Virus record (IMG/VR): IMGVR_UViG_3300032050_000004
Coordinates: 124,001 to 188,000 of that record
Strand: one strand, 5' to 3'
DNA: 64,000 bases
The stretch's first letter is position 1, and every line of letters starts with the position of its first letter. A model generated the notes under the pieces. That model did no database searches, was not told where the DNA came from, and saw only the letters and a list, made by a program, of their open reading frames with translations. Below are positions 42,006 through 51,304 of the stretch, one piece after another. A program made the translations under genes and the position numbers.

Positions 42006-43703
42006 ATGCCAATTCCCCCAAATAAAATAAAATACAGCACTTCTCAAGTAAATAATGCAGTTAAGGCTAAAAATTTTGCACTGGGAATTAATTCTCTTGC
42101 AGCATACGGTCCAACTAGCTCAACAGGTTTTTGGAATGGCATAACTCCAAAAGCTAGTGGATATACTATTTATGTTAATAAAATTTCTCAAGGACCATCA
42201 ATATTTTGTCCGGGAAATGATTTAGAATTTATTACACTGACAAATTATATATCAGGAATTAATCATACAACATTTAGCCAAGCTGCAGCTTGGTATGTTG
42301 GACAATCAGATATAATATGTGTCAATAAAGATTATCCAGACATAGTAACAAACGGATTAAGATTAATGGTTGATTCTAATTTTTTACCCTCATACTGTGG
42401 AAGCGGAACAACTTGGACTGATTTAAGTTATAGTGGATTCAATGTTACTTTATTAAACTCTCCAACATATGTTTTATCAGGTAGAAGTTCATATATAAAT
42501 TTTGCTTCTTCAAGTAGTAATTATGCAACTTTTAATGATTTAGGTAATTTAAATAATTTTACAGTTGAAGTTTGGGCTAAACAAAATTCTACTCCTGTTT
42601 CAAATGCTTATCCTACATTTATAACTAATACTTTTCCCGGACCTTCAGGAAATTATGTAAATTATGCTATAGGATATTTAAATGCTCCTTGGGATGGTAA
42701 AATATATGGAGGATTTTTTAATGGATCTTGGCAATTACCATCAGCTGGCTTTACACCCACAACAGACCAATGGTATCATTATTCAGTAACCTATAATGGC
42801 TCACAATTATTTTTTTATGTTGATGGTAAATATTATTCTTCCGCATCAACTTTGACAACCGCCCTATCTTCTGGTGCCGGTGGTAGATTAATGAGAAGAT
42901 GGGATACTACAGATTATATTGATGGTAATTTGTTAAATTCTAAAATTTATAATAGATCTTTAAATTCAACAGAAATTCTACAGAACTATAATGCTCATGC
43001 AGTTCCAGTTGGAGTTGAAACTAATGGATTAATTCTTAATCTAGATGCAGGTAATGTTTTATCTTACCCTCAAATCGGAACATTATGGAAAAGCACAGTT
43101 TCATCTGTTCAGAATAATGGTACTTTGACAAATGGGCCAACATTTAATTTATCTAATGGTGGAAGCATTGTATTTGATGGTGCAAATGATTATGTTTCAT
43201 TACCAGCAAACTTTTTCAACCACGATGCGGGAACACCTTTTAGTGTATCTATTTGGTTTAAAACAACTACAGCTGGAGGAACTTTATTTGGACAACAAAA
43301 TACAACAAACCCTTCTTCTGCCTCGGGTTATGTTCCTGCTATCTATATTAATTCTTCTGGAAAAATAGTTACATCTTGTTTTTGGGGTGGATCAGTATCA
43401 AATTCAACAACTTCAGTTACTTCTGTTAATGATGGTAATTGGCATAATATTGTTGTAACATTCGCATCAACATCACATAAAACATATTTAGATAATAATT
43501 TGATTGGTACTATTTCTAAAACACAAAATAATTATTCAGCGACTTATTATTATTTTTTAGGAGCAGGCTATAGTGCAGCTTGGACAGGTGCTAATGGTTT
43601 TTATTTCAATGGAAATATAGCTTATGCTTCATTTTATAATACTGAATTAACATCAACACAAGTTAATCAAAATTATCAATCACTAAATTATAGATTTATA
43701 TAA
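42006..43703 (+). CDS. Tandem LamG/concanavalin-A-like domain virion protein
   Basis: Two copies of the NGL.L.LDA...SY..GT.W / FTVEVW / WYHYSVTY / YNR.L..TEI.QNY domain. Confidence 0.85.
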   Translation: MPIPPNKIKYSTSQVNNAVKAKNFALGINSLAAYGPTSSTGFWNGITPKASGYTIYVNKISQGPSIFCPGNDLEFITLTNYISGINHTTFSQAAAWYVGQSDIICVNKDYPDIVTNGLRLMVDSNFLPSYCGSGTTWTDLSYSGFNVTLLNSPTYVLSGRSSYINFASSSSNYATFNDLGNLNNFTVEVWAKQNSTPVSNAYPTFITNTFPGPSGNYVNYAIGYLNAPWDGKIYGGFFNGSWQLPSAGFTPTTDQWYHYSVTYNGSQLFFYVDGKYYSSASTLTTALSSGAGGRLMRRWDTTDYIDGNLLNSKIYNRSLNSTEILQNYNAHAVPVGVETNGLILNLDAGNVLSYPQIGTLWKSTVSSVQNNGTLTNGPTFNLSNGGSIVFDGANDYVSLPANFFNHDAGTPFSVSIWFKTTTAGGTLFGQQNTTNPSSASGYVPAIYINSSGKIVTSCFWGGSVSNSTTSVTSVNDGNWHNIVVTFASTSHKTYLDNNLIGTISKTQNNYSATYYYFLGAGYSAAWTGANGFYFNGNIAYASFYNTELTSTQVNQNYQSLNYRFI

Positions 43704-44010: not shown

Positions 44011-47000
44011 ATGTCAGATATTTCAAATCAACTTATTAAAGATTCATTTAATTATGTATTACAATCTGATTTGGATACTGGTATTGTTTATAGAATTGGT
44101 GGTGACATTCCAGAAAACCCTCAATTTACATCAGGACTGACGGTTTCAAATGGTTTTAAATTCGAAGATTCCCCACAAGATGGTTATTTTCTTAAATCTG
44201 ATGCTTTCGGAAATGCTTCTTGGGCATTAGTAACAGGATCAGGTACTTCTGGATCAGCTGGTTCGTCAGGAAGAAACGGAAGTTCAGGCTCATCAGGAAG
44301 TTCTGGAATAAATGGTAGTTCAGGTTCTTCGGGCATAAATGGTAGCTCTGGTTCGTCTGGAACGTCTGGTACAAATGGAAGTTCCGGGAGTCGAGGTTCT
44401 AGCGGTAGTTCTGGTTCTTCTGGCTCATCTGGAACATCAGGTATCAATGGTCTTGATGGTTCTAATAGCTTAAGATGGTTTTATAGAACTGATCTAGAAG
44501 CTCCAAATAACCCCGGAAACCAAAATTTTATACTAAATGAAGTCAAGTTTAGTACTGTAACTAGAATTAGCATAAGTACACTAGATATAAACTCGAATGA
44601 TTCATATGATTGGTTAGAGACTATTGATGTTTTAAAAAGGGTTACAGGAAACTTAGTTTATTTTAAAATTACGAATGTCACAAATCCATCAAATTATGGA
44701 TTATACACAATTGCTGGCTCTACAGATCATGGAACTTATTTTGATTTTGATCTTACTTTAATAAATAGCGATTTAAGTACCATACAAGGAGAACAATTCT
44801 CTATATCATATGTATTTAATGGATTAAATGGTACTTCAGGAACTTCGGGGGAATCTGGAAGTTCTGGATCTTCTGGTGTATCAGGAACTGATGGTTCAGC
44901 TGGAACTTCTGGTACTTCTGGTACTTCTGGCAACAACGGAAATGATGGAACATCTGGTTCATCAGGAATAAATGGTAGCTCTGGAATAAACGGAAGTTCT
45001 GGTATAAATGGTAGTTCTGGAGTTAATGGTAGTTCAGGTTCATCAGGAGGAGCAGGATTAAGTGGAAGTTCTGGATCATCTGGTGCAAACGGAAGTTCTG
45101 GTTCATCAGGTATTTCTGGAGAATCTGGTTCATCTGGTAGTTCTGGTACATCAGGATCATCTGGTACAGGTTTTACTGCCATTCAAAGTCCTGCTAATTA
45201 TAGAGTATTAGTATCTGATAACACAACAGATACTGCAATTGCTCAATCTGGACTTACATATGATGGTCAACAATTATATATTTCTGGCAATACATTTATT
45301 ACAGGCACAATTTCAGCTACAACTTTTTATAGTTTAGTAGGTGATATAGAAAATTATGTCACAGTTGGTCTCAGTGGTAGTAATGTAGATTTTAATTCAA
45401 TAAAATTAGCAGTCGATAGTATTACTGGAGCAACTGAAGATAATCCATGGGAAGTTAGAGTTTATCCGGGCTTGTACTACGAAGATCCAATTATTATGAA
45501 ATCTTGGATCACAGTAAGAGGAAGCAATAGTACTGCAACAATTGTAGAAGCAAGTAATTCTGCGAATACAGTTTTTTTCATGGCAGATCAATCTATGATT
45601 TCAGACATGCAAATTCAAGGTTCTACTGCTTCTGGAACATCTGCTATCATATATTCTTCTTCGACCACTCCACAATTAAATGCAATTTCATATGTAGAAA
45701 ACGTCAGATTCGGCGAAAACTACACACACGCTAAAACAGTCGGTACTGGTGGTGGAAATTGCATAATGCAATGTTCTAATGTAAAATATGGTGGTTATCC
45801 TTTTACTATCGGCTTTGTAGTAACAAATGACGGTACTGGTATTGGCAGAATGCAACTAAGAAACGTCACTTCAACTAATGGTGGTGTAACTACTACAACA
45901 GGATTGATTTTTGCAAAAGCTGATGCACCAAGCTGTGCTTTTATTGTTAATGGTTGTTTATTAACAAAAGCTGTCGGTGCTGCAGCTGGTACCGGTTTCT
46001 GGGTTGAAAATGGAGCTTCTTTAAGATTGACTGCTGTAAATTTCCAAAGATGGGCTACAGCTATTTATGCTCCTAATACAGGATCATCCCCTAGTATATA
46101 TGGAAGTGCTTTAAATTTTGAAAATAACACAAAGGATATAATTGTAGAACATCCTTCAGCAACTGGACATATAGATGGAGCTGATACATTTTTAAAAACC
46201 GAAATACCAATTAATGCTCCTTTATACGAAGTTAATCAAGACCCAAAAAGAATTATAGTTGCAAAAAAAGGAGGAGATTTTTCATCTATTAAATCTGCTG
46301 TAGATTGGATTACAGGAAGTTCTAGCAGTAATAGGTTTGTGGTTTCTGTCGGTCCGGGTGAGTTTTTTGAAAATGAAATTGATCTTACATCTAAACCTTA
46401 TGTCAGTATTGTAGGTAGCAACATACAAACCACACAAATTTTTCCTAATTCTACTTCACAGCATATTATAAAATTAGGAATAAATAATGAAATATCTTTT
46501 TTAAGTTTATCAGGTGCTGGTTCTAGTTATTCTGCTATATATGTTGACGATATAGGGGATTTTGCACAAGCTCACAAAATTTCTGTTTACGATTGTGATA
46601 TAGGTGTATGGGTAAAATCTTCCACCCAAGACACAAAATTCTATGGTGAATACATGGATTTTAATGGAGATTTTACCTATGGAGTTCGTGTAGATGCGAC
46701 AAATTCATTTTCGGCATTAGCCAATATGGAAAACTATTATCTTTTTCCAACCTATGATAATGTGATTGGTAATAGTGCAGATGGTTTAGGTGCAAGACTT
46801 AATTTATACACAGGTGAATTTGAAGGTGCTCAATTGACTGGTTCTACAGCAATAAAACTTTCAGATCAAGCTGAACTTGAAGCTGGCAATTTAGATATTC
46901 AAGATTGGAATAAGTCGTTTGAAATTCCTAATTCCGGTGGTGGTCCAGTTGCTAGGATTGTAGGTTCAATGATTCACAATTCTATCACCTACGATATTGA

Positions 47001-48276
47001 AATTCTAAACCCTGCTGCATCCTTTAGATATCAAGGTATATCTGATCATACTAAAATATATAATGTAAGCAATAATGTGTTTTGGAATTTTCTTGATGAT
47101 GTAGATGGGGAAAATGATATTACAAGAAAAATATCAGTTACATTTTCAGATGGAACACATACGGATGCTTCAACATTAATTTTTCAAAGTAGTTCAATGG
47201 GCCTTCTAAACGGAGGTACAATTACAATAGTTAGTGGTTTAACAATAAACACCACATCAGGGTTTGGATATGTAGCAGATCAAATTGATAATAGTATTAT
47301 AAAAAGATATGATTGGAATAATAATCAAATAACATTGTCTGCAAATACAAATAATTATATTTATATTTCCAATAATGGTTCTTTAGTCGCTAATTCTGGA
47401 TTACCTGATCCATTCTATAGTATAATAATGGGTAGAGTTGTTACAAATTCAACAGGCATTGAATTAATTGATCAATCACCATATAATGCACAACATACAG
47501 CAAATTTATTATCTTCATTTAACAGGCAAGCACTTGGCCCAGTATTTTCAACTGGTTCAATTGTAACTACTGGAACTACAGCATTTACATTGGATGTTAG
47601 TACAGGAAACTATTGGTTATCAGAAAATAATTTTTTACCTACAGGTGGAACATCAATAAATTTTACTCAGTATTGGAATAATGGATCAGGATTCACAACA
47701 AGTGCTACAACATATGTTAATAGTAGTCAATTCAATCCAAATCAAAATTCACTATCTTCTCTTACAAGCTCTTATTACACAAAACATACTTTGTATGTAG
47801 TTGGCGATGGAATAAATGAAGAATATTTTTTAGTTCTTGGTCAAAACGAGTATGCTACTTTAATTGAAACAGAAGACGCACCTTTACCTATACCTCCCGA
47901 TTTTTTTACAGATGGTGTAGTTTCTATAGCATCAATTTATATTAAAGATGGTGAATCAGGAATTGTTCAAATTGAAGATATAAGACCTGTAATTGGTTTT
48001 AAATCCAGTGGTGTAAATGCCACATCAGTTCATGGAAATCTTTTAGGTCTTACATCAGATGATCATCAACAATACATTTTAGTTGATGGTGGTAGGCAGA
48101 TGACAGGAGATCTTGGAATTGGTGGCTTTGATATATATAATATAAATCAAATAACTTCTACTGGCATTACAACAAACACACTTAATGTAGCTAATTTATC
48201 TAATGATGAATCTCTAACGAGATATGTTGTTGTAGATGTTTCTGGAAACACATTTTATAAAAACGAAGGTCAGTAA
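44011..48276 (+). CDS. Tail fibre/spike with collagen-like G-S-S repeats and two pectin-lyase-like regions
   Basis: Two (G-X-S)n blocks; duplicated DFxSIKxAVDxITG....xVxVxPGxxxE beta-helix caps. Confidence 0.75.
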   Translation: MSDISNQLIKDSFNYVLQSDLDTGIVYRIGGDIPENPQFTSGLTVSNGFKFEDSPQDGYFLKSDAFGNASWALVTGSGTSGSAGSSGRNGSSGSSGSSGINGSSGSSGINGSSGSSGTSGTNGSSGSRGSSGSSGSSGSSGTSGINGLDGSNSLRWFYRTDLEAPNNPGNQNFILNEVKFSTVTRISISTLDINSNDSYDWLETIDVLKRVTGNLVYFKITNVTNPSNYGLYTIAGSTDHGTYFDFDLTLINSDLSTIQGEQFSISYVFNGLNGTSGTSGESGSSGSSGVSGTDGSAGTSGTSGTSGNNGNDGTSGSSGINGSSGINGSSGINGSSGVNGSSGSSGGAGLSGSSGSSGANGSSGSSGISGESGSSGSSGTSGSSGTGFTAIQSPANYRVLVSDNTTDTAIAQSGLTYDGQQLYISGNTFITGTISATTFYSLVGDIENYVTVGLSGSNVDFNSIKLAVDSITGATEDNPWEVRVYPGLYYEDPIIMKSWITVRGSNSTATIVEASNSANTVFFMADQSMISDMQIQGSTASGTSAIIYSSSTTPQLNAISYVENVRFGENYTHAKTVGTGGGNCIMQCSNVKYGGYPFTIGFVVTNDGTGIGRMQLRNVTSTNGGVTTTTGLIFAKADAPSCAFIVNGCLLTKAVGAAAGTGFWVENGASLRLTAVNFQRWATAIYAPNTGSSPSIYGSALNFENNTKDIIVEHPSATGHIDGADTFLKTEIPINAPLYEVNQDPKRIIVAKKGGDFSSIKSAVDWITGSSSSNRFVVSVGPGEFFENEIDLTSKPYVSIVGSNIQTTQIFPNSTSQHIIKLGINNEISFLSLSGAGSSYSAIYVDDIGDFAQAHKISVYDCDIGVWVKSSTQDTKFYGEYMDFNGDFTYGVRVDATNSFSALANMENYYLFPTYDNVIGNSADGLGARLNLYTGEFEGAQLTGSTAIKLSDQAELEAGNLDIQDWNKSFEIPNSGGGPVARIVGSMIHNSITYDIEILNPAASFRYQGISDHTKIYNVSNNVFWNFLDDVDGENDITRKISVTFSDGTHTDASTLIFQSSSMGLLNGGTITIVSGLTINTTSGFGYVADQIDNSIIKRYDWNNNQITLSANTNNYIYISNNGSLVANSGLPDPFYSIIMGRVVTNSTGIELIDQSPYNAQHTANLLSSFNRQALGPVFSTGSIVTTGTTAFTLDVSTGNYWLSENNFLPTGGTSINFTQYWNNGSGFTTSATTYVNSSQFNPNQNSLSSLTSSYYTKHTLYVVGDGINEEYFLVLGQNEYATLIETEDAPLPIPPDFFTDGVVSIASIYIKDGESGIVQIEDIRPVIGFKSSGVNATSVHGNLLGLTSDDHQQYILVDGGRQMTGDLGIGGFDIYNINQITSTGITTNTLNVANLSNDESLTRYVVVDVSGNTFYKNEGQ

Positions 48277-48924
48277 GGTGTATCTGGTTCTTCAGGTAGT
48301 TCGGGAAGTTCTGGTCAAAGTGGTAGCTCAGGTTCTTCTGGTAGTTCTGGATTTGATGGTAGTTCTGGATCTTCTGGTATATCTGGAAGTTCTGGAAGTT
48401 CTGGCGAAAGTGGTAGCTCTGGAACTTCAGGGTTTTCAGGTTCATCTGGTTCTTCTGGTGAATCAGGTAGTTCAGGATCATCTGGTCAATCTGGAAGTTC
48501 AGGTTCATCAGGATCTTCAGGAGCAGCAGGAACTTCAGGTAGTTCCGGAACAAGTTCAACCAATATAGATACTTTAAGCTTTACAGTAGACACTGGTGGT
48601 GCAGCAACAATAAGTTCAGGACTTAAATCTTTCGTCTATTTACCTTATAGCGGTACAATTCTGTCTTGGACTATATTATCAAACAATTCAGGAAGTACCG
48701 AAATTGATATTTATAAAACAGATTATGCAAATTATCCACCTACATCAGGAGATACTATAATAAATTCAGGTTACCCAAATTTGAACAACAATATAAAAAA
48801 TCAAAGTTCGAATTTATCCGGATGGAATTCAACAACATTCAATGAAGATGAAATTCTTGGTTTTTATGTAGTTTCAGCACAAACTTTAACAAGAGTACAA
48901 TTAATTTTAAAAATTCAAAAATAA
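48277..48924 (+). other. In-frame continuation (215 codons, no ATG) of the fibre gene beyond a single TAA
   Basis: GGT CAG TAA GGT GTA TCT GGT TCT TCA...; about 30 G-X-X triplets then a globular domain, ending 1 nt before the next ATG. Confidence 0.85.
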
Positions 48925-48925
48925 A

Positions 48926-51304
48926 ATGGCAAAAGTAGCAGTAGAACATATTTTTACAGGATCGACCACAGGTATAACAACCTACAATTCTGATTATACA
49001 ATGATAGGTTCATTGTACAAACAATTTACAGGAGCAACCGCTCAAGATAATTACATAAGTCTATTGCCAACAAGTATGGTAAATATAACTGATGTAGCAG
49101 GTTCCACATATGCATATCCATATGTTCACAAATGGTCGGATAATATATTCTGGGTTTTTATGGCAACCACAGTTACTGCAGCCGCAACGAGACAATTCGG
49201 TTTATTTGAATATGACCTAAATGCCAACACAACAACTTGGAAAGGTTTTATAACATTGCAAGGAACACAACTTGGCGGTAGTAAAACCGTAAGAGGGTTT
49301 AGGACTTATGTCTATGAAACAACAGGCGGAACAGTATCGGCAACCACATCTTCAACCATAACAGGGTCAGGAACAGCTTTTCAAACTGACAGGATTGCTG
49401 TCGGTGCAAGAATTGGATTCGGTTCAACCGACCCAACTCAAATATCCACTTGGTATGAAATTACAGCAATTGCCTCAGACACAAGTTTAACCATAGGCAA
49501 TACTGTTACAGTATCCGCAGGCTCATCTTATGTCATAGAGGAAATCAGGCTTTATTTTTTACAAACAAATGCAACTATAAACAATGGTGGATTATATATA
49601 ATAAAGGGTCTAAATTATTCAACATTCGCACTAGGTGGAAACAATATAACTGAATCAACAACAACAGACAACATAAGGGCTTCATATCTATTGAAAGATT
49701 TTACACCTTCTACCGTAACTATATCTCAAGCTTCTCCGGGTGTTGTTACATTAGTTAGTCACGGATTGAGGCTGAATGATGCCGTTTTTTTTACAACCAC
49801 AGGTGCCCTCCCAACGGGATTTGTTGCGAACACTACATATTATGTGACTTCAACTTCATTGGCTGCAAATACTTTTACGCTTTCTGCAACGATAAATGGA
49901 GCACCTATTAATACAAGTACCGCAGGTTCCGGTGTCCATACTTTGCATTCAGCCATGAGTGTTTTAGGTGGTGGAATAGGTATGGATGAACCTGTAAGTG
50001 CAACAGAACATAATGTTTATTTATTGAATTCAGAAGTAACAAACACAACCGCCAGACTTGTAAAATACAACGTTAAAGCTTCATTGACTCCAGCAAGTGC
50101 CAATGGAGCAACTGGGGCATTGTCATTGAGAACTACTCCGCTATTAGTTACAGGTACAATTTCACTATTGAACAACGGTAGGATAGTGGCAGTTCAACAT
50201 GGATCCGCTTCAGGTATAAAAAGTTTTTATTTTGCAACCACAACGAGAATTTACAGATGTACGGAATCAACAATTTTAGACAACTCTTCATCGTTTCTGA
50301 GTGATCAAATGATTGAGATTCCACCCGGAGGTCTTGCAAACGCCGCCTATAATTTATTGTCATCAATGGCTTCGGTTGATTATTCATCTACATTGGACAG
50401 GCTTTTGATTACCACGACTACACAAAGGTTTGGGGTTTACGCAGCTCAATACAACACAAGCGGAACACTTCCTTTTGACAAGATATTTGCCGCTAACTTA
50501 AACCGATACAAATTGGGTTATACACCTGTAGGTACCGTTGACGGATTATTCCCACAAGCGACTTTGACACTTTGGAGTGAAGCAGGCTTGTTTTTTGCCG
50601 CACCTGTAACAACCACCTCGGGTTTAAATTGGCTTTTGATTTTCCCCGGGGGTGGTGATGGGTATTTTGCCACATATTCGAATGAAAGGGTAATTACACC
50701 AAAAATGGCAACTCCTAATGCTTCGAAACTTTATCGTGCATATGTTGAAAACTCGGATTATTTGGGAACTTATCAATTGGGCTTCCCGCCTGACCCATTC
50801 AGGATTTTTTTCAGAACTGCAGGTATAGACGATAACACTGGTTCATGGACCGAAGTTCCTGAAAGCGGTGATTTGAGTTCGTTCTCGCCATCTACACACA
50901 TACAGTTCATGCTGGAACTTGACACCTTGGGTGAAGCATGTGCCCCTACAAGGATATATGCTGTCACTTGCCTGTATGACGATTCTTCAACAGATGTGCA
51001 TTATCAACCATCAATAAAATATTCAGATTACGTTAATAAGAGATTTGCTTGGTGGTTTGCGTTAGCTTGGGGTTCAACTGTTCCAACTTTAAGAGTCAGG
51101 CTATACGATGCAGTGACCAACAATTTACTGGTTGATGACAACACCGGTTCTCCAACAGGAACTTTTGAAAAATCAACTGATGGCGGTTCTACTTGGAGTT
51201 CATATGACAATACGGACCGAGCAAATACTACAACATATATAAGATATACACCTGCTTCTCTAGGTGACAATATCAAAGTTAAATTCATTCTAACACAAAA
51301 TTAA
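48926..51304 (+). CDS. Thr/Ser/Gly-rich virion structural or fibre protein
   Basis: 792 aa, beta-rich, with a SPGVVT..HGL..D.V.FTTTGALPTG insert typical of fibre modules. Confidence 0.65.
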   Translation: MAKVAVEHIFTGSTTGITTYNSDYTMIGSLYKQFTGATAQDNYISLLPTSMVNITDVAGSTYAYPYVHKWSDNIFWVFMATTVTAAATRQFGLFEYDLNANTTTWKGFITLQGTQLGGSKTVRGFRTYVYETTGGTVSATTSSTITGSGTAFQTDRIAVGARIGFGSTDPTQISTWYEITAIASDTSLTIGNTVTVSAGSSYVIEEIRLYFLQTNATINNGGLYIIKGLNYSTFALGGNNITESTTTDNIRASYLLKDFTPSTVTISQASPGVVTLVSHGLRLNDAVFFTTTGALPTGFVANTTYYVTSTSLAANTFTLSATINGAPINTSTAGSGVHTLHSAMSVLGGGIGMDEPVSATEHNVYLLNSEVTNTTARLVKYNVKASLTPASANGATGALSLRTTPLLVTGTISLLNNGRIVAVQHGSASGIKSFYFATTTRIYRCTESTILDNSSSFLSDQMIEIPPGGLANAAYNLLSSMASVDYSSTLDRLLITTTTQRFGVYAAQYNTSGTLPFDKIFAANLNRYKLGYTPVGTVDGLFPQATLTLWSEAGLFFAAPVTTTSGLNWLLIFPGGGDGYFATYSNERVITPKMATPNASKLYRAYVENSDYLGTYQLGFPPDPFRIFFRTAGIDDNTGSWTEVPESGDLSSFSPSTHIQFMLELDTLGEACAPTRIYAVTCLYDDSSTDVHYQPSIKYSDYVNKRFAWWFALAWGSTVPTLRVRLYDAVTNNLLVDDNTGSPTGTFEKSTDGGSTWSSYDNTDRANTTTYIRYTPASLGDNIKVKFILTQN

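What the first reader, a model, noticed from the sequence alone, without database searches (positions are those of the whole stretch)
48241..48926. Fibre gene split by one in-frame TAA, with an intact startless 215-aa continuation
Seen: the 1421-aa ORF ends ...NEGQ-TAA. The same frame continues GVS-GSS-GSS-GSS-GQS... in perfect G-X-X register, then a ~120-aa globular domain, and stops at 48924, 1 nt before the next gene. The continuation has no ATG and no sign of decay. The TAA occupies the third position of a triplet that is GQS elsewhere, so a single TCA>TAA change explains it. Inference: either a recent nonsense variant that drops the terminal module (a possible host-range switch), programmed readthrough giving short and long fibres, or an assembly error. 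TAA is the main stop elsewhere, so this is not code reassignment.
Basis: seen in the sequence. Interest (0 to 1): 0.68.

Follow-up and report, generated by a model that had tools for sequence, protein, structure and literature searches.

The report
Natural nonsense allele truncating phage fibre
A freshwater jumbo phage carries a real one-letter change (TCA to TAA) that cuts the last collagen stalk and tip knob off its long tail-fibre gene, while sister strains in other lakes keep the sense codon. This is an ordinary but well-documented natural truncation, not readthrough, recoding or an assembly error.

Summary
ORF 44011-48276 (1421 aa) ends GGT-CAG-TAA. The same frame stays open for 215 codons (48277-48921): the rest of a 32-triplet G-X-Y run, then a 125-aa domain. 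It ends 1 nt before the next gene, and its first canonical start is codon 169.

- **Not an assembly error.** The exact 1421-aa product is called on at least 24 contigs from JGI and ENA assemblies. All 10 loci fetched and 4 IMG/VR contigs read TAA.
- **A nonsense allele of TCA.** A roughly 99.5%-identical haplotype reads TCA (Ser) at 48275, with linked SNPs, in one JGI contig and in contigs of two sequencing runs. Three relatives at about 64% aa identity have one uninterrupted ORF with AGT (Ser) there and the same downstream gene.
- **Not recoding.** TAA ends 163 of 203 ORFs. The contig has 3 tRNAs and no suppressor. No other gene is split this way.
- **Intactness is expected.** TAA-bearing contigs differ by 0-3 SNPs per 5-15 kb, so the intact continuation reflects youth. 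Long-term dN/dS of the tip domain is 0.20, like the rest of the gene.

The lost module is a collagen stalk plus a jelly-roll knob. [quoted passage not shown] The effect on host range is inferred, not shown.

The parts
44011..48276 (+). Truncated tail-fibre ORF as encoded in this strain (1421 aa plus TAA)
   Evidence: ORF list and translation. PHROG tail-fibre families and Pfam Collagen PF01391. The exact product is called on at least 24 public contigs.
44242..44466 (+). Collagen-like run 1 (25 G-X-Y triplets)
   Evidence: Regex on the translation; PF01391.
44821..45171 (+). Collagen-like run 2 (39 G-X-Y triplets)
45328..47130 (+). Central region with two similar halves, probably tandem right-handed beta-helices (possible glycan-degrading part). 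This is a lead only.
   Evidence: The AF2 model is all-beta, with one short helix at the head of each half, but pLDDT is only 51.9. Weak Foldseek hits are all beta-helix enzymes or tailspikes: GH55, PL6, HK620, CBA120. Atlas feature hit to PF13229 at rank 14. No Pfam or PDB sequence match.
48268..48555 (+). Collagen-like run 3 (32 uninterrupted G-X-Y triplets), broken in its first triplet by the stop
   Evidence: The continuation hits PF01391 at E 5e-16.
48274..48276 (+). The in-frame TAA. It is the nonsense allele of TCA (Ser), with the polymorphic base at 48275 (A here, C in sister strains).
   Evidence: TAA in the window, 4 IMG/VR contigs, 10 JGI/ENA loci and run X14. TCA in runs X16 and X18 and in JGI contig L011. 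AGT (Ser) in relatives L009 and L012.
48277..48921 (+). Startless 215-codon continuation. This is the ancestral 3' end of the fibre gene and is untranslated in this strain.
   Evidence: Translation. First canonical start is at codon 169. It is colinear with the uninterrupted ORFs of L009, P0005 and P0124. It is identical in all 10 TAA loci over 48277-48914.
48547..48921 (+). C-terminal jelly-roll beta-sandwich knob (125 aa), the distal tip of the full-length fibre
   Evidence: AF2 pLDDT 94.5. Z 10.2, rmsd 2.3 over 104 residues to phage 7-7-1 tail fibres chain 9rkv_M, residues 471-581. TM 0.9 to the C-termini of collagen-repeat proteins of uncultured phages. 9058 cluster representatives at E<=1e-3; in nearly all of the 150 listed the domain is at or near the C-terminus. 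phrog_35197 and phrog_10330. No Pfam family.
48922..48924 (+). Ancestral terminal stop of the fibre gene, 1 nt before the next gene's ATG
   Evidence: The spacing is the same in relatives: L009 4375/4377 and L012 4283/4285.
48926..51304 (+). Next gene (792 aa, no family match). It is syntenic in relatives and is a divergent allele in the TCA-bearing strain.
   Evidence: L011 is only about 65-70% identical here, and the X16/X18 contigs leave the window sequence at 48979.
48236..48568 (+). Spurious out-of-frame 110-aa ORF over the collagen repeat. Gene callers used it to fill the uncalled gap.
   Evidence: It is called as a gene in L020-L023 and L027.

Best explanation
The TAA at 48274-48276 is a genuine, naturally circulating nonsense allele that arose by a single C>A change from TCA (Ser). 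It sits in the long collagen-containing tail-fibre gene of an uncultivated freshwater jumbo phage (222-kb contig, 29% GC).

In this strain translation ends at residue 1421. The fibre keeps its N-terminal part, two collagen stalks and the large central, probably beta-helical, region. It lacks the third collagen stalk (about 31 triplets) and the 125-aa jelly-roll knob that forms the distal tip in the full-length protein. The 645-nt remainder is untranslated. It looks intact only because the lineage carrying the stop is very young.

**Shown:** the reality of the stop, the sense codon in sister strains and relatives, the absence of recoding, and the fold of the lost domain.

**Inferred:** that the truncated fibre still assembles and works, and that losing the tip alters adsorption or host range.
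For: 1. **The stop is reproducible.** The exact 1421-aa product is called on at least 24 contigs in JGI and ENA assemblies. All 10 loci fetched read TAA, as do 4 IMG/VR contigs and a contig of run X14.
2. **The sense allele exists.** At 48275, contigs of runs X16 and X18 read C, together with linked SNPs at 47685, 47712, 47724, 47805, 48165, 48279, 48915 and 48918. JGI contig L011 carries the same haplotype, and its gene call P0004 reads straight through as ...NEGQSGVSGSS....
3. **The ancestral state is sense.** Relatives L009, P0005 and P0124/L012 (64% aa identity) have one unbroken ORF with AGT (Ser) at the aligned codon. They share the same C-terminal domain, the same 1-nt spacer and the same 792-aa next gene.
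4. **There is no recoding.** TAA ends 163 of 203 ORFs, TAA-G ends 8 of them, and no other gene has a long startless continuation. The contig has only tRNA-Arg, tRNA-Met and tRNA-Asn.
5. **The allele is young.** TAA-bearing contigs differ from the window by 0-3 mismatches per 5-15 kb, so about 0.1 changes are expected in 645 nt. Long-term dN/dS of the knob is 0.20, against 0.18-0.23 for residues 1001-1399. The haplotype differences downstream of the stop are 3 synonymous changes, 1 Asp>Glu and one in-frame triplet indel.
Against: - There is no protein-level evidence that translation stops here or that the short fibre is functional.
- Only Logan contigs were informative. The one raw-read run had no usable depth, so allele frequencies within a sample are unknown.
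- Many TAA-bearing JGI samples have neighbouring sample numbers and may come from a few lakes or projects. The 24 contigs are therefore independent assemblies, not 24 independent populations.
- The only database contig with the sense codon (L011) has its own 32-nt frameshifting deletion upstream. No fully intact copy of this exact fibre was found; intact copies were seen only in the 64%-identical relatives.
Confidence: 0.86

Rival explanations
1. The stop is leaky or subject to programmed readthrough. Most chains end at 1421 aa, while a fraction reads through and gives a long fibre with stalk and knob, so virions carry both forms.
For: The continuation is in the zero frame, in exact G-X-Y register, and intact. 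The TAA allele is common and is found in runs released from 2017 to 2025, which shows it is at least tolerated.
Against: - The stop is not conserved. Sister strains have TCA and relatives have AGT.
- By general knowledge, TAA is the least leaky bacterial stop. The TAA-G context also ends 8 ordinary genes here.
- There is no suppressor tRNA on the contig.
- The downstream RNA is no more structured than shuffled sequence, z -0.75.
- Intactness is fully explained by the youth of the lineage.
- A trimeric collagen stalk would need three readthrough chains together, by inference.
Confidence: 0.07
2. The 215-codon continuation is expressed as a separate protein, from a non-canonical start or by re-initiation after the stop. 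It would resemble the stand-alone 150-300-aa collagen-plus-knob proteins seen in other phages.
For: Short stand-alone proteins with a collagen run and this knob exist: P0003 (253 aa) and many 140-300-aa representatives. An AAGG/TAAGGTG purine-rich stretch overlaps the stop.
Against: - There is no ATG/GTG/TTG before codon 169.
- The stand-alone proteins have their own Met and an N-terminal segment before the collagen run. Here the run starts two residues before the stop, inside the upstream ORF.
- In sister strains and relatives the segment is simply the end of the fibre ORF.
Confidence: 0.03
3. Sequencing or assembly artefact: the true base at 48275 is C.
For: None found. The site lies next to a low-complexity repeat where assemblers often struggle; many short repeat-derived contigs pile up at 48255-48605.
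Against: - TAA is identical in at least 24 contigs from different samples, two data sources and different assemblers, and in 4 IMG/VR contigs.
- The A/C difference is linked to a haplotype of other SNPs. That is what two real alleles look like, not random error.
Confidence: 0.01

Closest known systems
Lambda PaPa stf frameshift versus Ur-lambda (Hendrix & Duda 1992, as summarised in PMC12617516)
   Same: A single small lesion in a fibre gene removes the distal part of an accessory fibre. The rest of the reading frame is left recognisable downstream, the phage stays viable, and sister strains keep the intact gene.
   Different: In lambda the lesion is a frameshift, seen in a laboratory stock. 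Here it is a nonsense substitution seen in many environmental assemblies, with the sense allele present in other lake samples. No phenotype has been measured here.
Long tail fibre gp015 of Agrobacterium phage 7-7-1 (PDB 9RKV; PMC12796354)
   Same: Both have an N-terminal anchor, a beta-helical middle and a C-terminal jelly-roll domain at the fibre tip. The knob model superposes on residues 471-581 with Z 10.2 and rmsd 2.3 A over 104 residues.
   Different: Sequence identity is only 9%. gp015 has no collagen-like stalks and is 570-590 aa, against 1637 aa here. The similarity is of fold, not of demonstrated family.
Programmed readthrough in phage Qbeta (coat/A1), by general knowledge
   Same: An in-frame stop is followed by an open, functional-looking extension of a virion protein.
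   Different: Qbeta uses a leaky UGA that is a fixed feature of the phage. Here the codon is TAA and is not conserved even among near-identical strains.
Stop-codon recoding in phages (TAG=Q, TGA=W; e.g. PMC9523058)
   Same: An in-frame stop lies in a late structural gene of an uncultivated phage.
   Different: Recoded phages have many in-frame stops of one kind and usually a suppressor tRNA. Here there is a single TAA, TAA is the main terminator, and no suppressor was found.
Collagen-like phage and spore-surface fibres with a C-terminal globular head (PHROG collagen-like tail fibres; Bacillus BclA, by general knowledge)
   Same: G-X-Y repeats are followed directly by a C-terminal beta-sandwich head.
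   Different: The head here is not a detected C1q/TNF family member by sequence. TNF-like 4-1BBL appears only at Z 6.4, within the noise of jelly-roll matches.

Membership tests
Natural truncating allele of a phage fibre gene (lambda PaPa stf type) | The lesion is real and reproducible in independent data | tested here: met
   TAA in at least 24 contigs (JGI and ENA), 4 IMG/VR contigs and a contig of run X14.
Natural truncating allele of a phage fibre gene (lambda PaPa stf type) | Closely related strains carry the uninterrupted codon | tested here: met
   TCA in X16, X18 and L011/P0004, which are about 99.5% identical over 45100-48950. AGT in L009 and L012.
Natural truncating allele of a phage fibre gene (lambda PaPa stf type) | The downstream remainder is colinear with the intact gene's 3' end and has no start of its own | tested here: met
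   Alignment to P0001 runs through to the last residue. First canonical start is at codon 169.
Natural truncating allele of a phage fibre gene (lambda PaPa stf type) | Virions lack the distal part of the fibre and adsorption changes | not testable with these tools
   The phage is uncultivated and no proteomic or imaging data are available.
Programmed stop-codon readthrough | The stop codon is conserved at the site among relatives | tested here: not met
   Sense codons in 3 near-identical sources and 3 distant relatives.
Programmed stop-codon readthrough | A leaky stop or stimulatory context | tested here: not met
   The TAA-G context is also used at 8 ordinary gene ends. Downstream fold z -0.75.
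Programmed stop-codon readthrough | Both short and extended products are made | not testable with these tools
   This needs proteomics or a reporter assay.
Stop-codon reassignment (alternative genetic code) | Many in-frame occurrences of the codon across genes, and the codon rare as a terminator | tested here: not met
   TAA ends 163 of 203 ORFs. Only this locus has a long startless continuation.
Stop-codon reassignment (alternative genetic code) | A suppressor tRNA is encoded | tested here: not met
   ARAGORN finds only Arg(tct), Met(cat) and Asn(gtt) on the 222-kb contig. The contig may be incomplete.
Collagen-like phage tail fibre with a C-terminal knob | G-X-Y collagen-like repeats | tested here: met
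   PF01391 at E 1e-23 and 5e-16. Runs of 25, 39 and 32 triplets.
Collagen-like phage tail fibre with a C-terminal knob | A globular C-terminal domain of the kind found at fibre tips | tested here: met
   pLDDT 94.5 jelly-roll model. Z 10.2 to the 7-7-1 fibre tip. TM 0.9 to the C-termini of phage collagen-repeat proteins. The domain is at or near the C-terminus in nearly all of the 150 listed homologues.
Collagen-like phage tail fibre with a C-terminal knob | Trimeric assembly and presence in the virion | not tested
   No complex prediction was run. phrog_10330 is annotated 'virion structural protein', which is annotation only.

The most novel reading that the evidence does not exclude
The TAA/TCA pair may be a maintained polymorphism rather than a passing defect. 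A one-nucleotide toggle would add or remove the distal stalk-and-knob module of a modular fibre. It would be kept in lake populations by fluctuating host availability and moved between backgrounds by the recombination seen at the gene's edges.

Other truncating variants in the same adsorption gene cluster fit this picture: a 43-nt duplication and a 107-nt deletion at one spot in the upstream lectin-like gene, and a 32-nt deletion in the fibre of the TCA strain. Together they would point to frequent, selected on/off switching of receptor-binding modules in a wild jumbo phage.
Probability: 0.12. Interest if true: 0.6.

Novelty: new member of a known kind. Interest (0 to 1): 0.3.

Why it matters
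For annotation, the 645-nt gap after the fibre gene should be labelled as the untranslated remainder of a truncated gene. The out-of-frame 110-aa ORF that pipelines call there should be dropped.

For biology, this is a clean natural example of a phage receptor-recognition protein shortened by one base change. Both alleles are present in public lake metagenomes, so anyone with the raw time-series reads can follow allele frequencies against host dynamics.

The work also flags a very large, unnamed family of fibre-tip domains: more than 9000 cluster representatives and no Pfam model. The truncation itself is of a familiar kind and overturns nothing.

Tried and rejected
- **INPHARED phage records.** No close relative. 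The only DNA hits were 67%-identical collagen repeats in a 735-kb uncultured phage. DnaE polymerase hits were at most 33% identical.
- **Raw-read run X21.** Only 2 reads were laid, so there is no pileup.
- **Pattern scan of metagenome contigs for either allele.** It returned only the window's own contig, Ga0315906_10000019. The IMG/VR scan returned the same four TAA contigs.
- **The listing of cluster members.** It reported the exact 1421-aa protein as absent, although look-up of encoding contigs found it on 24 contigs. The first result was therefore not used.
- **Paralogues.** There is no second copy of the knob or of the lead-in on the 222-kb contig.
- **Pfam and PDB sequence searches.** Nothing for the knob or for the central and distal regions.
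- **AF2 of the central 601 aa.** With only 4 sequences the pLDDT was 51.9. The beta-helix reading rests on weak, though uniform, Foldseek hits and is offered only as a lead.
- **The protein-atlas search.** It was repeated with a window reference.
- **Other bypass mechanisms.** Frameshifting, hopping and transcriptional slippage were rejected from the sequence. The continuation is in the zero frame, the only nearby homopolymer is A5, and no matching take-off and landing codons flank the stop.
- **BASEL paper (PMC8594841).** Its 'premature stop codon' passage concerns a P2 repressor, not a fibre.
Full report
**Setting**

The window is bases 124001-188000 of a single 222,069-bp metagenomic contig, Ga0315906_10000019. 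The contig is 29% G+C and has three tRNA genes. It has a DnaE-type polymerase next to the fibre region and several very long ORFs. It is therefore an uncultivated jumbo phage. Sequencing-run records place it in freshwater and lake metagenomes released from 2017 to 2025. No close relative exists among deposited phage genomes.

**The observation**

ORF 44011-48276 encodes 1421 aa and ends ...FYKNEGQ-TAA. The same frame continues GVS GSS GSS GSS GQS... A regular-expression scan shows one uninterrupted run of 32 G-X-Y triplets from 48268 to 48555, with the TAA as the third residue of the first triplet.

A 125-aa non-repetitive domain follows. The frame closes with TAA at 48922-48924, and the next gene's ATG is at 48926. 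The first canonical start codon of the continuation is at codon 169 of 215. No other open segment on the whole contig has so long a startless lead. Chance would give 215 stop-free codons with a probability of about 3e-8 at this composition.

**Is the stop real?**

Yes.

- Four IMG/VR contigs from four samples are 99.99-100% identical over 9 kb and carry TAA.
- An exact-sequence look-up finds the 1421-aa product called on at least 24 contigs in JGI and ENA assemblies. The ENA contigs have MEGAHIT-style names.
- All ten loci fetched read TAA and have no difference from the window anywhere in 48277-48914.
- A Logan contig of run X14 also reads TAA.

**What do relatives have?**

Two levels of relatives answer this.

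1. *Near-identical strains.* Contigs of runs X16 and X18 read C at 48275, that is TCA (Ser). They also carry linked SNPs at 47685, 47712, 47724, 47805, 48165, 48279, 48915 and 48918. A JGI contig, L011 from sample 3300057150, carries this same haplotype. Its gene call P0004 runs straight through the site as ...NEGQSGVSGSS....
2. *More distant relatives.* L009, P0005 and P0124/L012 are 64% identical in protein and 71-77% in DNA. Each has one unbroken ORF that ends in the same domain. Each has AGT (Ser) aligned to the TAA, the same 1-nt spacer and the same 792-aa downstream gene.

The ancestral state is therefore a serine codon.

**Recoding and readthrough**

- TAA terminates 163 of 203 long ORFs, and TAA-G terminates eight of them.
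- The other in-frame neighbouring ORF pairs on the contig all have a canonical start within 60 codons of the stop that separates them; only this segment has a long startless lead.
- No suppressor tRNA is present.
- The RNA downstream of the stop is no more structured than shuffled controls, z -0.75.
- The stop is not conserved even among near-identical strains.
- Frameshifting or hopping cannot apply, because the continuation is in the zero frame.

**Why is the remainder intact?**

The lineage is young. TAA-bearing contigs differ from the window by 0-3 mismatches per 5-15 kb. About 0.1 changes are therefore expected in 645 nt, and none is seen.

Over the long term the tip domain has been under the same constraint as the rest of the gene. 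Against L009 and L012 its dN/dS is 0.20, compared with 0.18-0.23 for residues 1001-1399 and 0.10-0.11 for the central region. Between the TAA and TCA haplotypes, the changes downstream of the stop are three synonymous, one Asp>Glu and one in-frame loss of a GSS triplet. Upstream they are 13 synonymous and 2 non-synonymous. With L009 and L012 as outgroups, at most one synonymous change (ATA>ATT at 48915) falls on the TAA branch. 'No sign of decay' therefore says nothing either way about translation of the remainder.

**What is lost?**

The 125-aa domain folds with high confidence (pLDDT 94.5) as a jelly-roll beta-sandwich.

[quoted passage not shown] Next come YomS and the C-terminal domain of XepA, at Z 8.8-8.9.
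- The 7-7-1 paper describes residues 473-587 of long tail fibre gp015 as the C-terminal 'triple jelly roll' of the trimer (PMC12796354).
- Among predicted viral structures it matches, at TM 0.9, the C-termini of 'collagen triple helix repeat' proteins of uncultured tailed phages.
- An exhaustive HMMER search finds 9058 cluster representatives at E<=1e-3 and 4380 at E<=1e-10. In nearly all of the 150 listed hits the domain lies at or near the C-terminus, in proteins of 111-1450 aa.
- Pfam has no model for it. PHROGs 35197 and 10330 cover it.

The truncated product thus lacks a collagen stalk and a distal knob. It keeps the N-terminal region, two collagen runs and a large central region. The central region looks like two tandem right-handed beta-helices, but that rests only on a low-confidence model and weak, if uniform, matches.

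**Population picture**

L011 is a mosaic. It is about 99.5% identical to the window from 45100 to 48950. It is only 65-85% identical in the fibre's 5' end and in the next gene. The X16 and X18 contigs leave the window sequence at 48979 with L011's letters.

One TAA-bearing ENA contig, L024, carries a short patch of the other haplotype at 48915-48950. Recombination around this gene is therefore active, yet the TAA allele is the commoner one in the assemblies examined. It is at least well tolerated.

The share-of-words values of the runs fit this picture. A pure L011-type genome should hold about 0.65-0.7 of the words of 46500-50000. Runs X18 and X19 hold 0.68 and 0.66.

**Verdict**

This is a real, recent, naturally circulating nonsense allele that shortens a modular tail fibre by its distal stalk and knob (confidence about 0.86). 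It is the environmental counterpart of the lambda PaPa stf lesion (PMC12617516).

Functional readthrough (about 0.07), separate expression of the remainder (about 0.03) and artefact (about 0.01) are poorly supported. The host-range consequence is an inference.

Interest is modest. The kind of event is familiar, but the case is unusually well documented, and both alleles can be tracked in public lake data.

Noticed in passing
L011:1957-1975 (aligned to window 45908-45939): The only database contig that carries the sense codon (JGI 3300057150) has a 32-nt deletion inside the same fibre gene. The deletion shifts the frame and splits the gene into 657-aa and 962-aa calls. This is a single, unverified contig. 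If real, the fibre is broken at a different place in the sister haplotype too.
   Followed up: partly
window 43487-43596 (upstream gene 42006-43703, two Laminin_G_3 / ConA-like lectin domains): Two frameshifting structural variants start at the same spot in otherwise identical contigs. L027 (3300008114) has a 43-nt tandem duplication after 43487. L020 (3300008267) has a 107-nt deletion of 43490-43596. This may be a mutational hot spot in a putative adhesin gene. It is unexplained.
   Followed up: partly
window ~45100 and ~48950-48979; L024 (window 48915-48950): There are sharp mosaic boundaries. L011 and the X16/X18 contigs are about 99.5% identical to the window inside 45100-48950 but 65-85% identical outside, including the 792-aa next gene. 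L024 has a short patch of the other haplotype on a TAA background. This points to recent recombination around the fibre gene.
   Followed up: partly
window 48547-48921 and homologues P0125-P0274: The C-terminal knob belongs to a very large family with no Pfam model: 9058 representatives at E<=1e-3. In the listed hits it is nearly always at the end of a protein, and in the examples looked at it follows collagen-like repeats. It is a candidate for a new domain family definition.
   Followed up: partly
G000 C1:221970-222069 (contig 3' end, outside the window): The contig ends inside another GSS/GTS collagen-like repeat. The assembly probably broke at a repeat and the genome may be incomplete. A suppressor tRNA or further fibre genes beyond the end therefore cannot be excluded.
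   Followed up: no
window 48236-48568 (+) and 48200-48559 (-): The collagen repeat also holds stop-free out-of-frame and antisense ORFs of 110 and 119 aa. Several public annotations call the 110-aa one as a gene in place of the true remainder.
   Followed up: yes
window 8155-29032 (-): Three very long ORFs lie in a row (1739, 2581 and 2505 aa). The 2581-aa one is listed from a TTG start. They were not examined.
   Followed up: no
G000 C1:196335-198074 (+), outside the window: This is the only other open segment on the contig with a long startless lead: 80 codons before the first ATG/GTG/TTG in a 579-codon segment. It was not examined.
   Followed up: no
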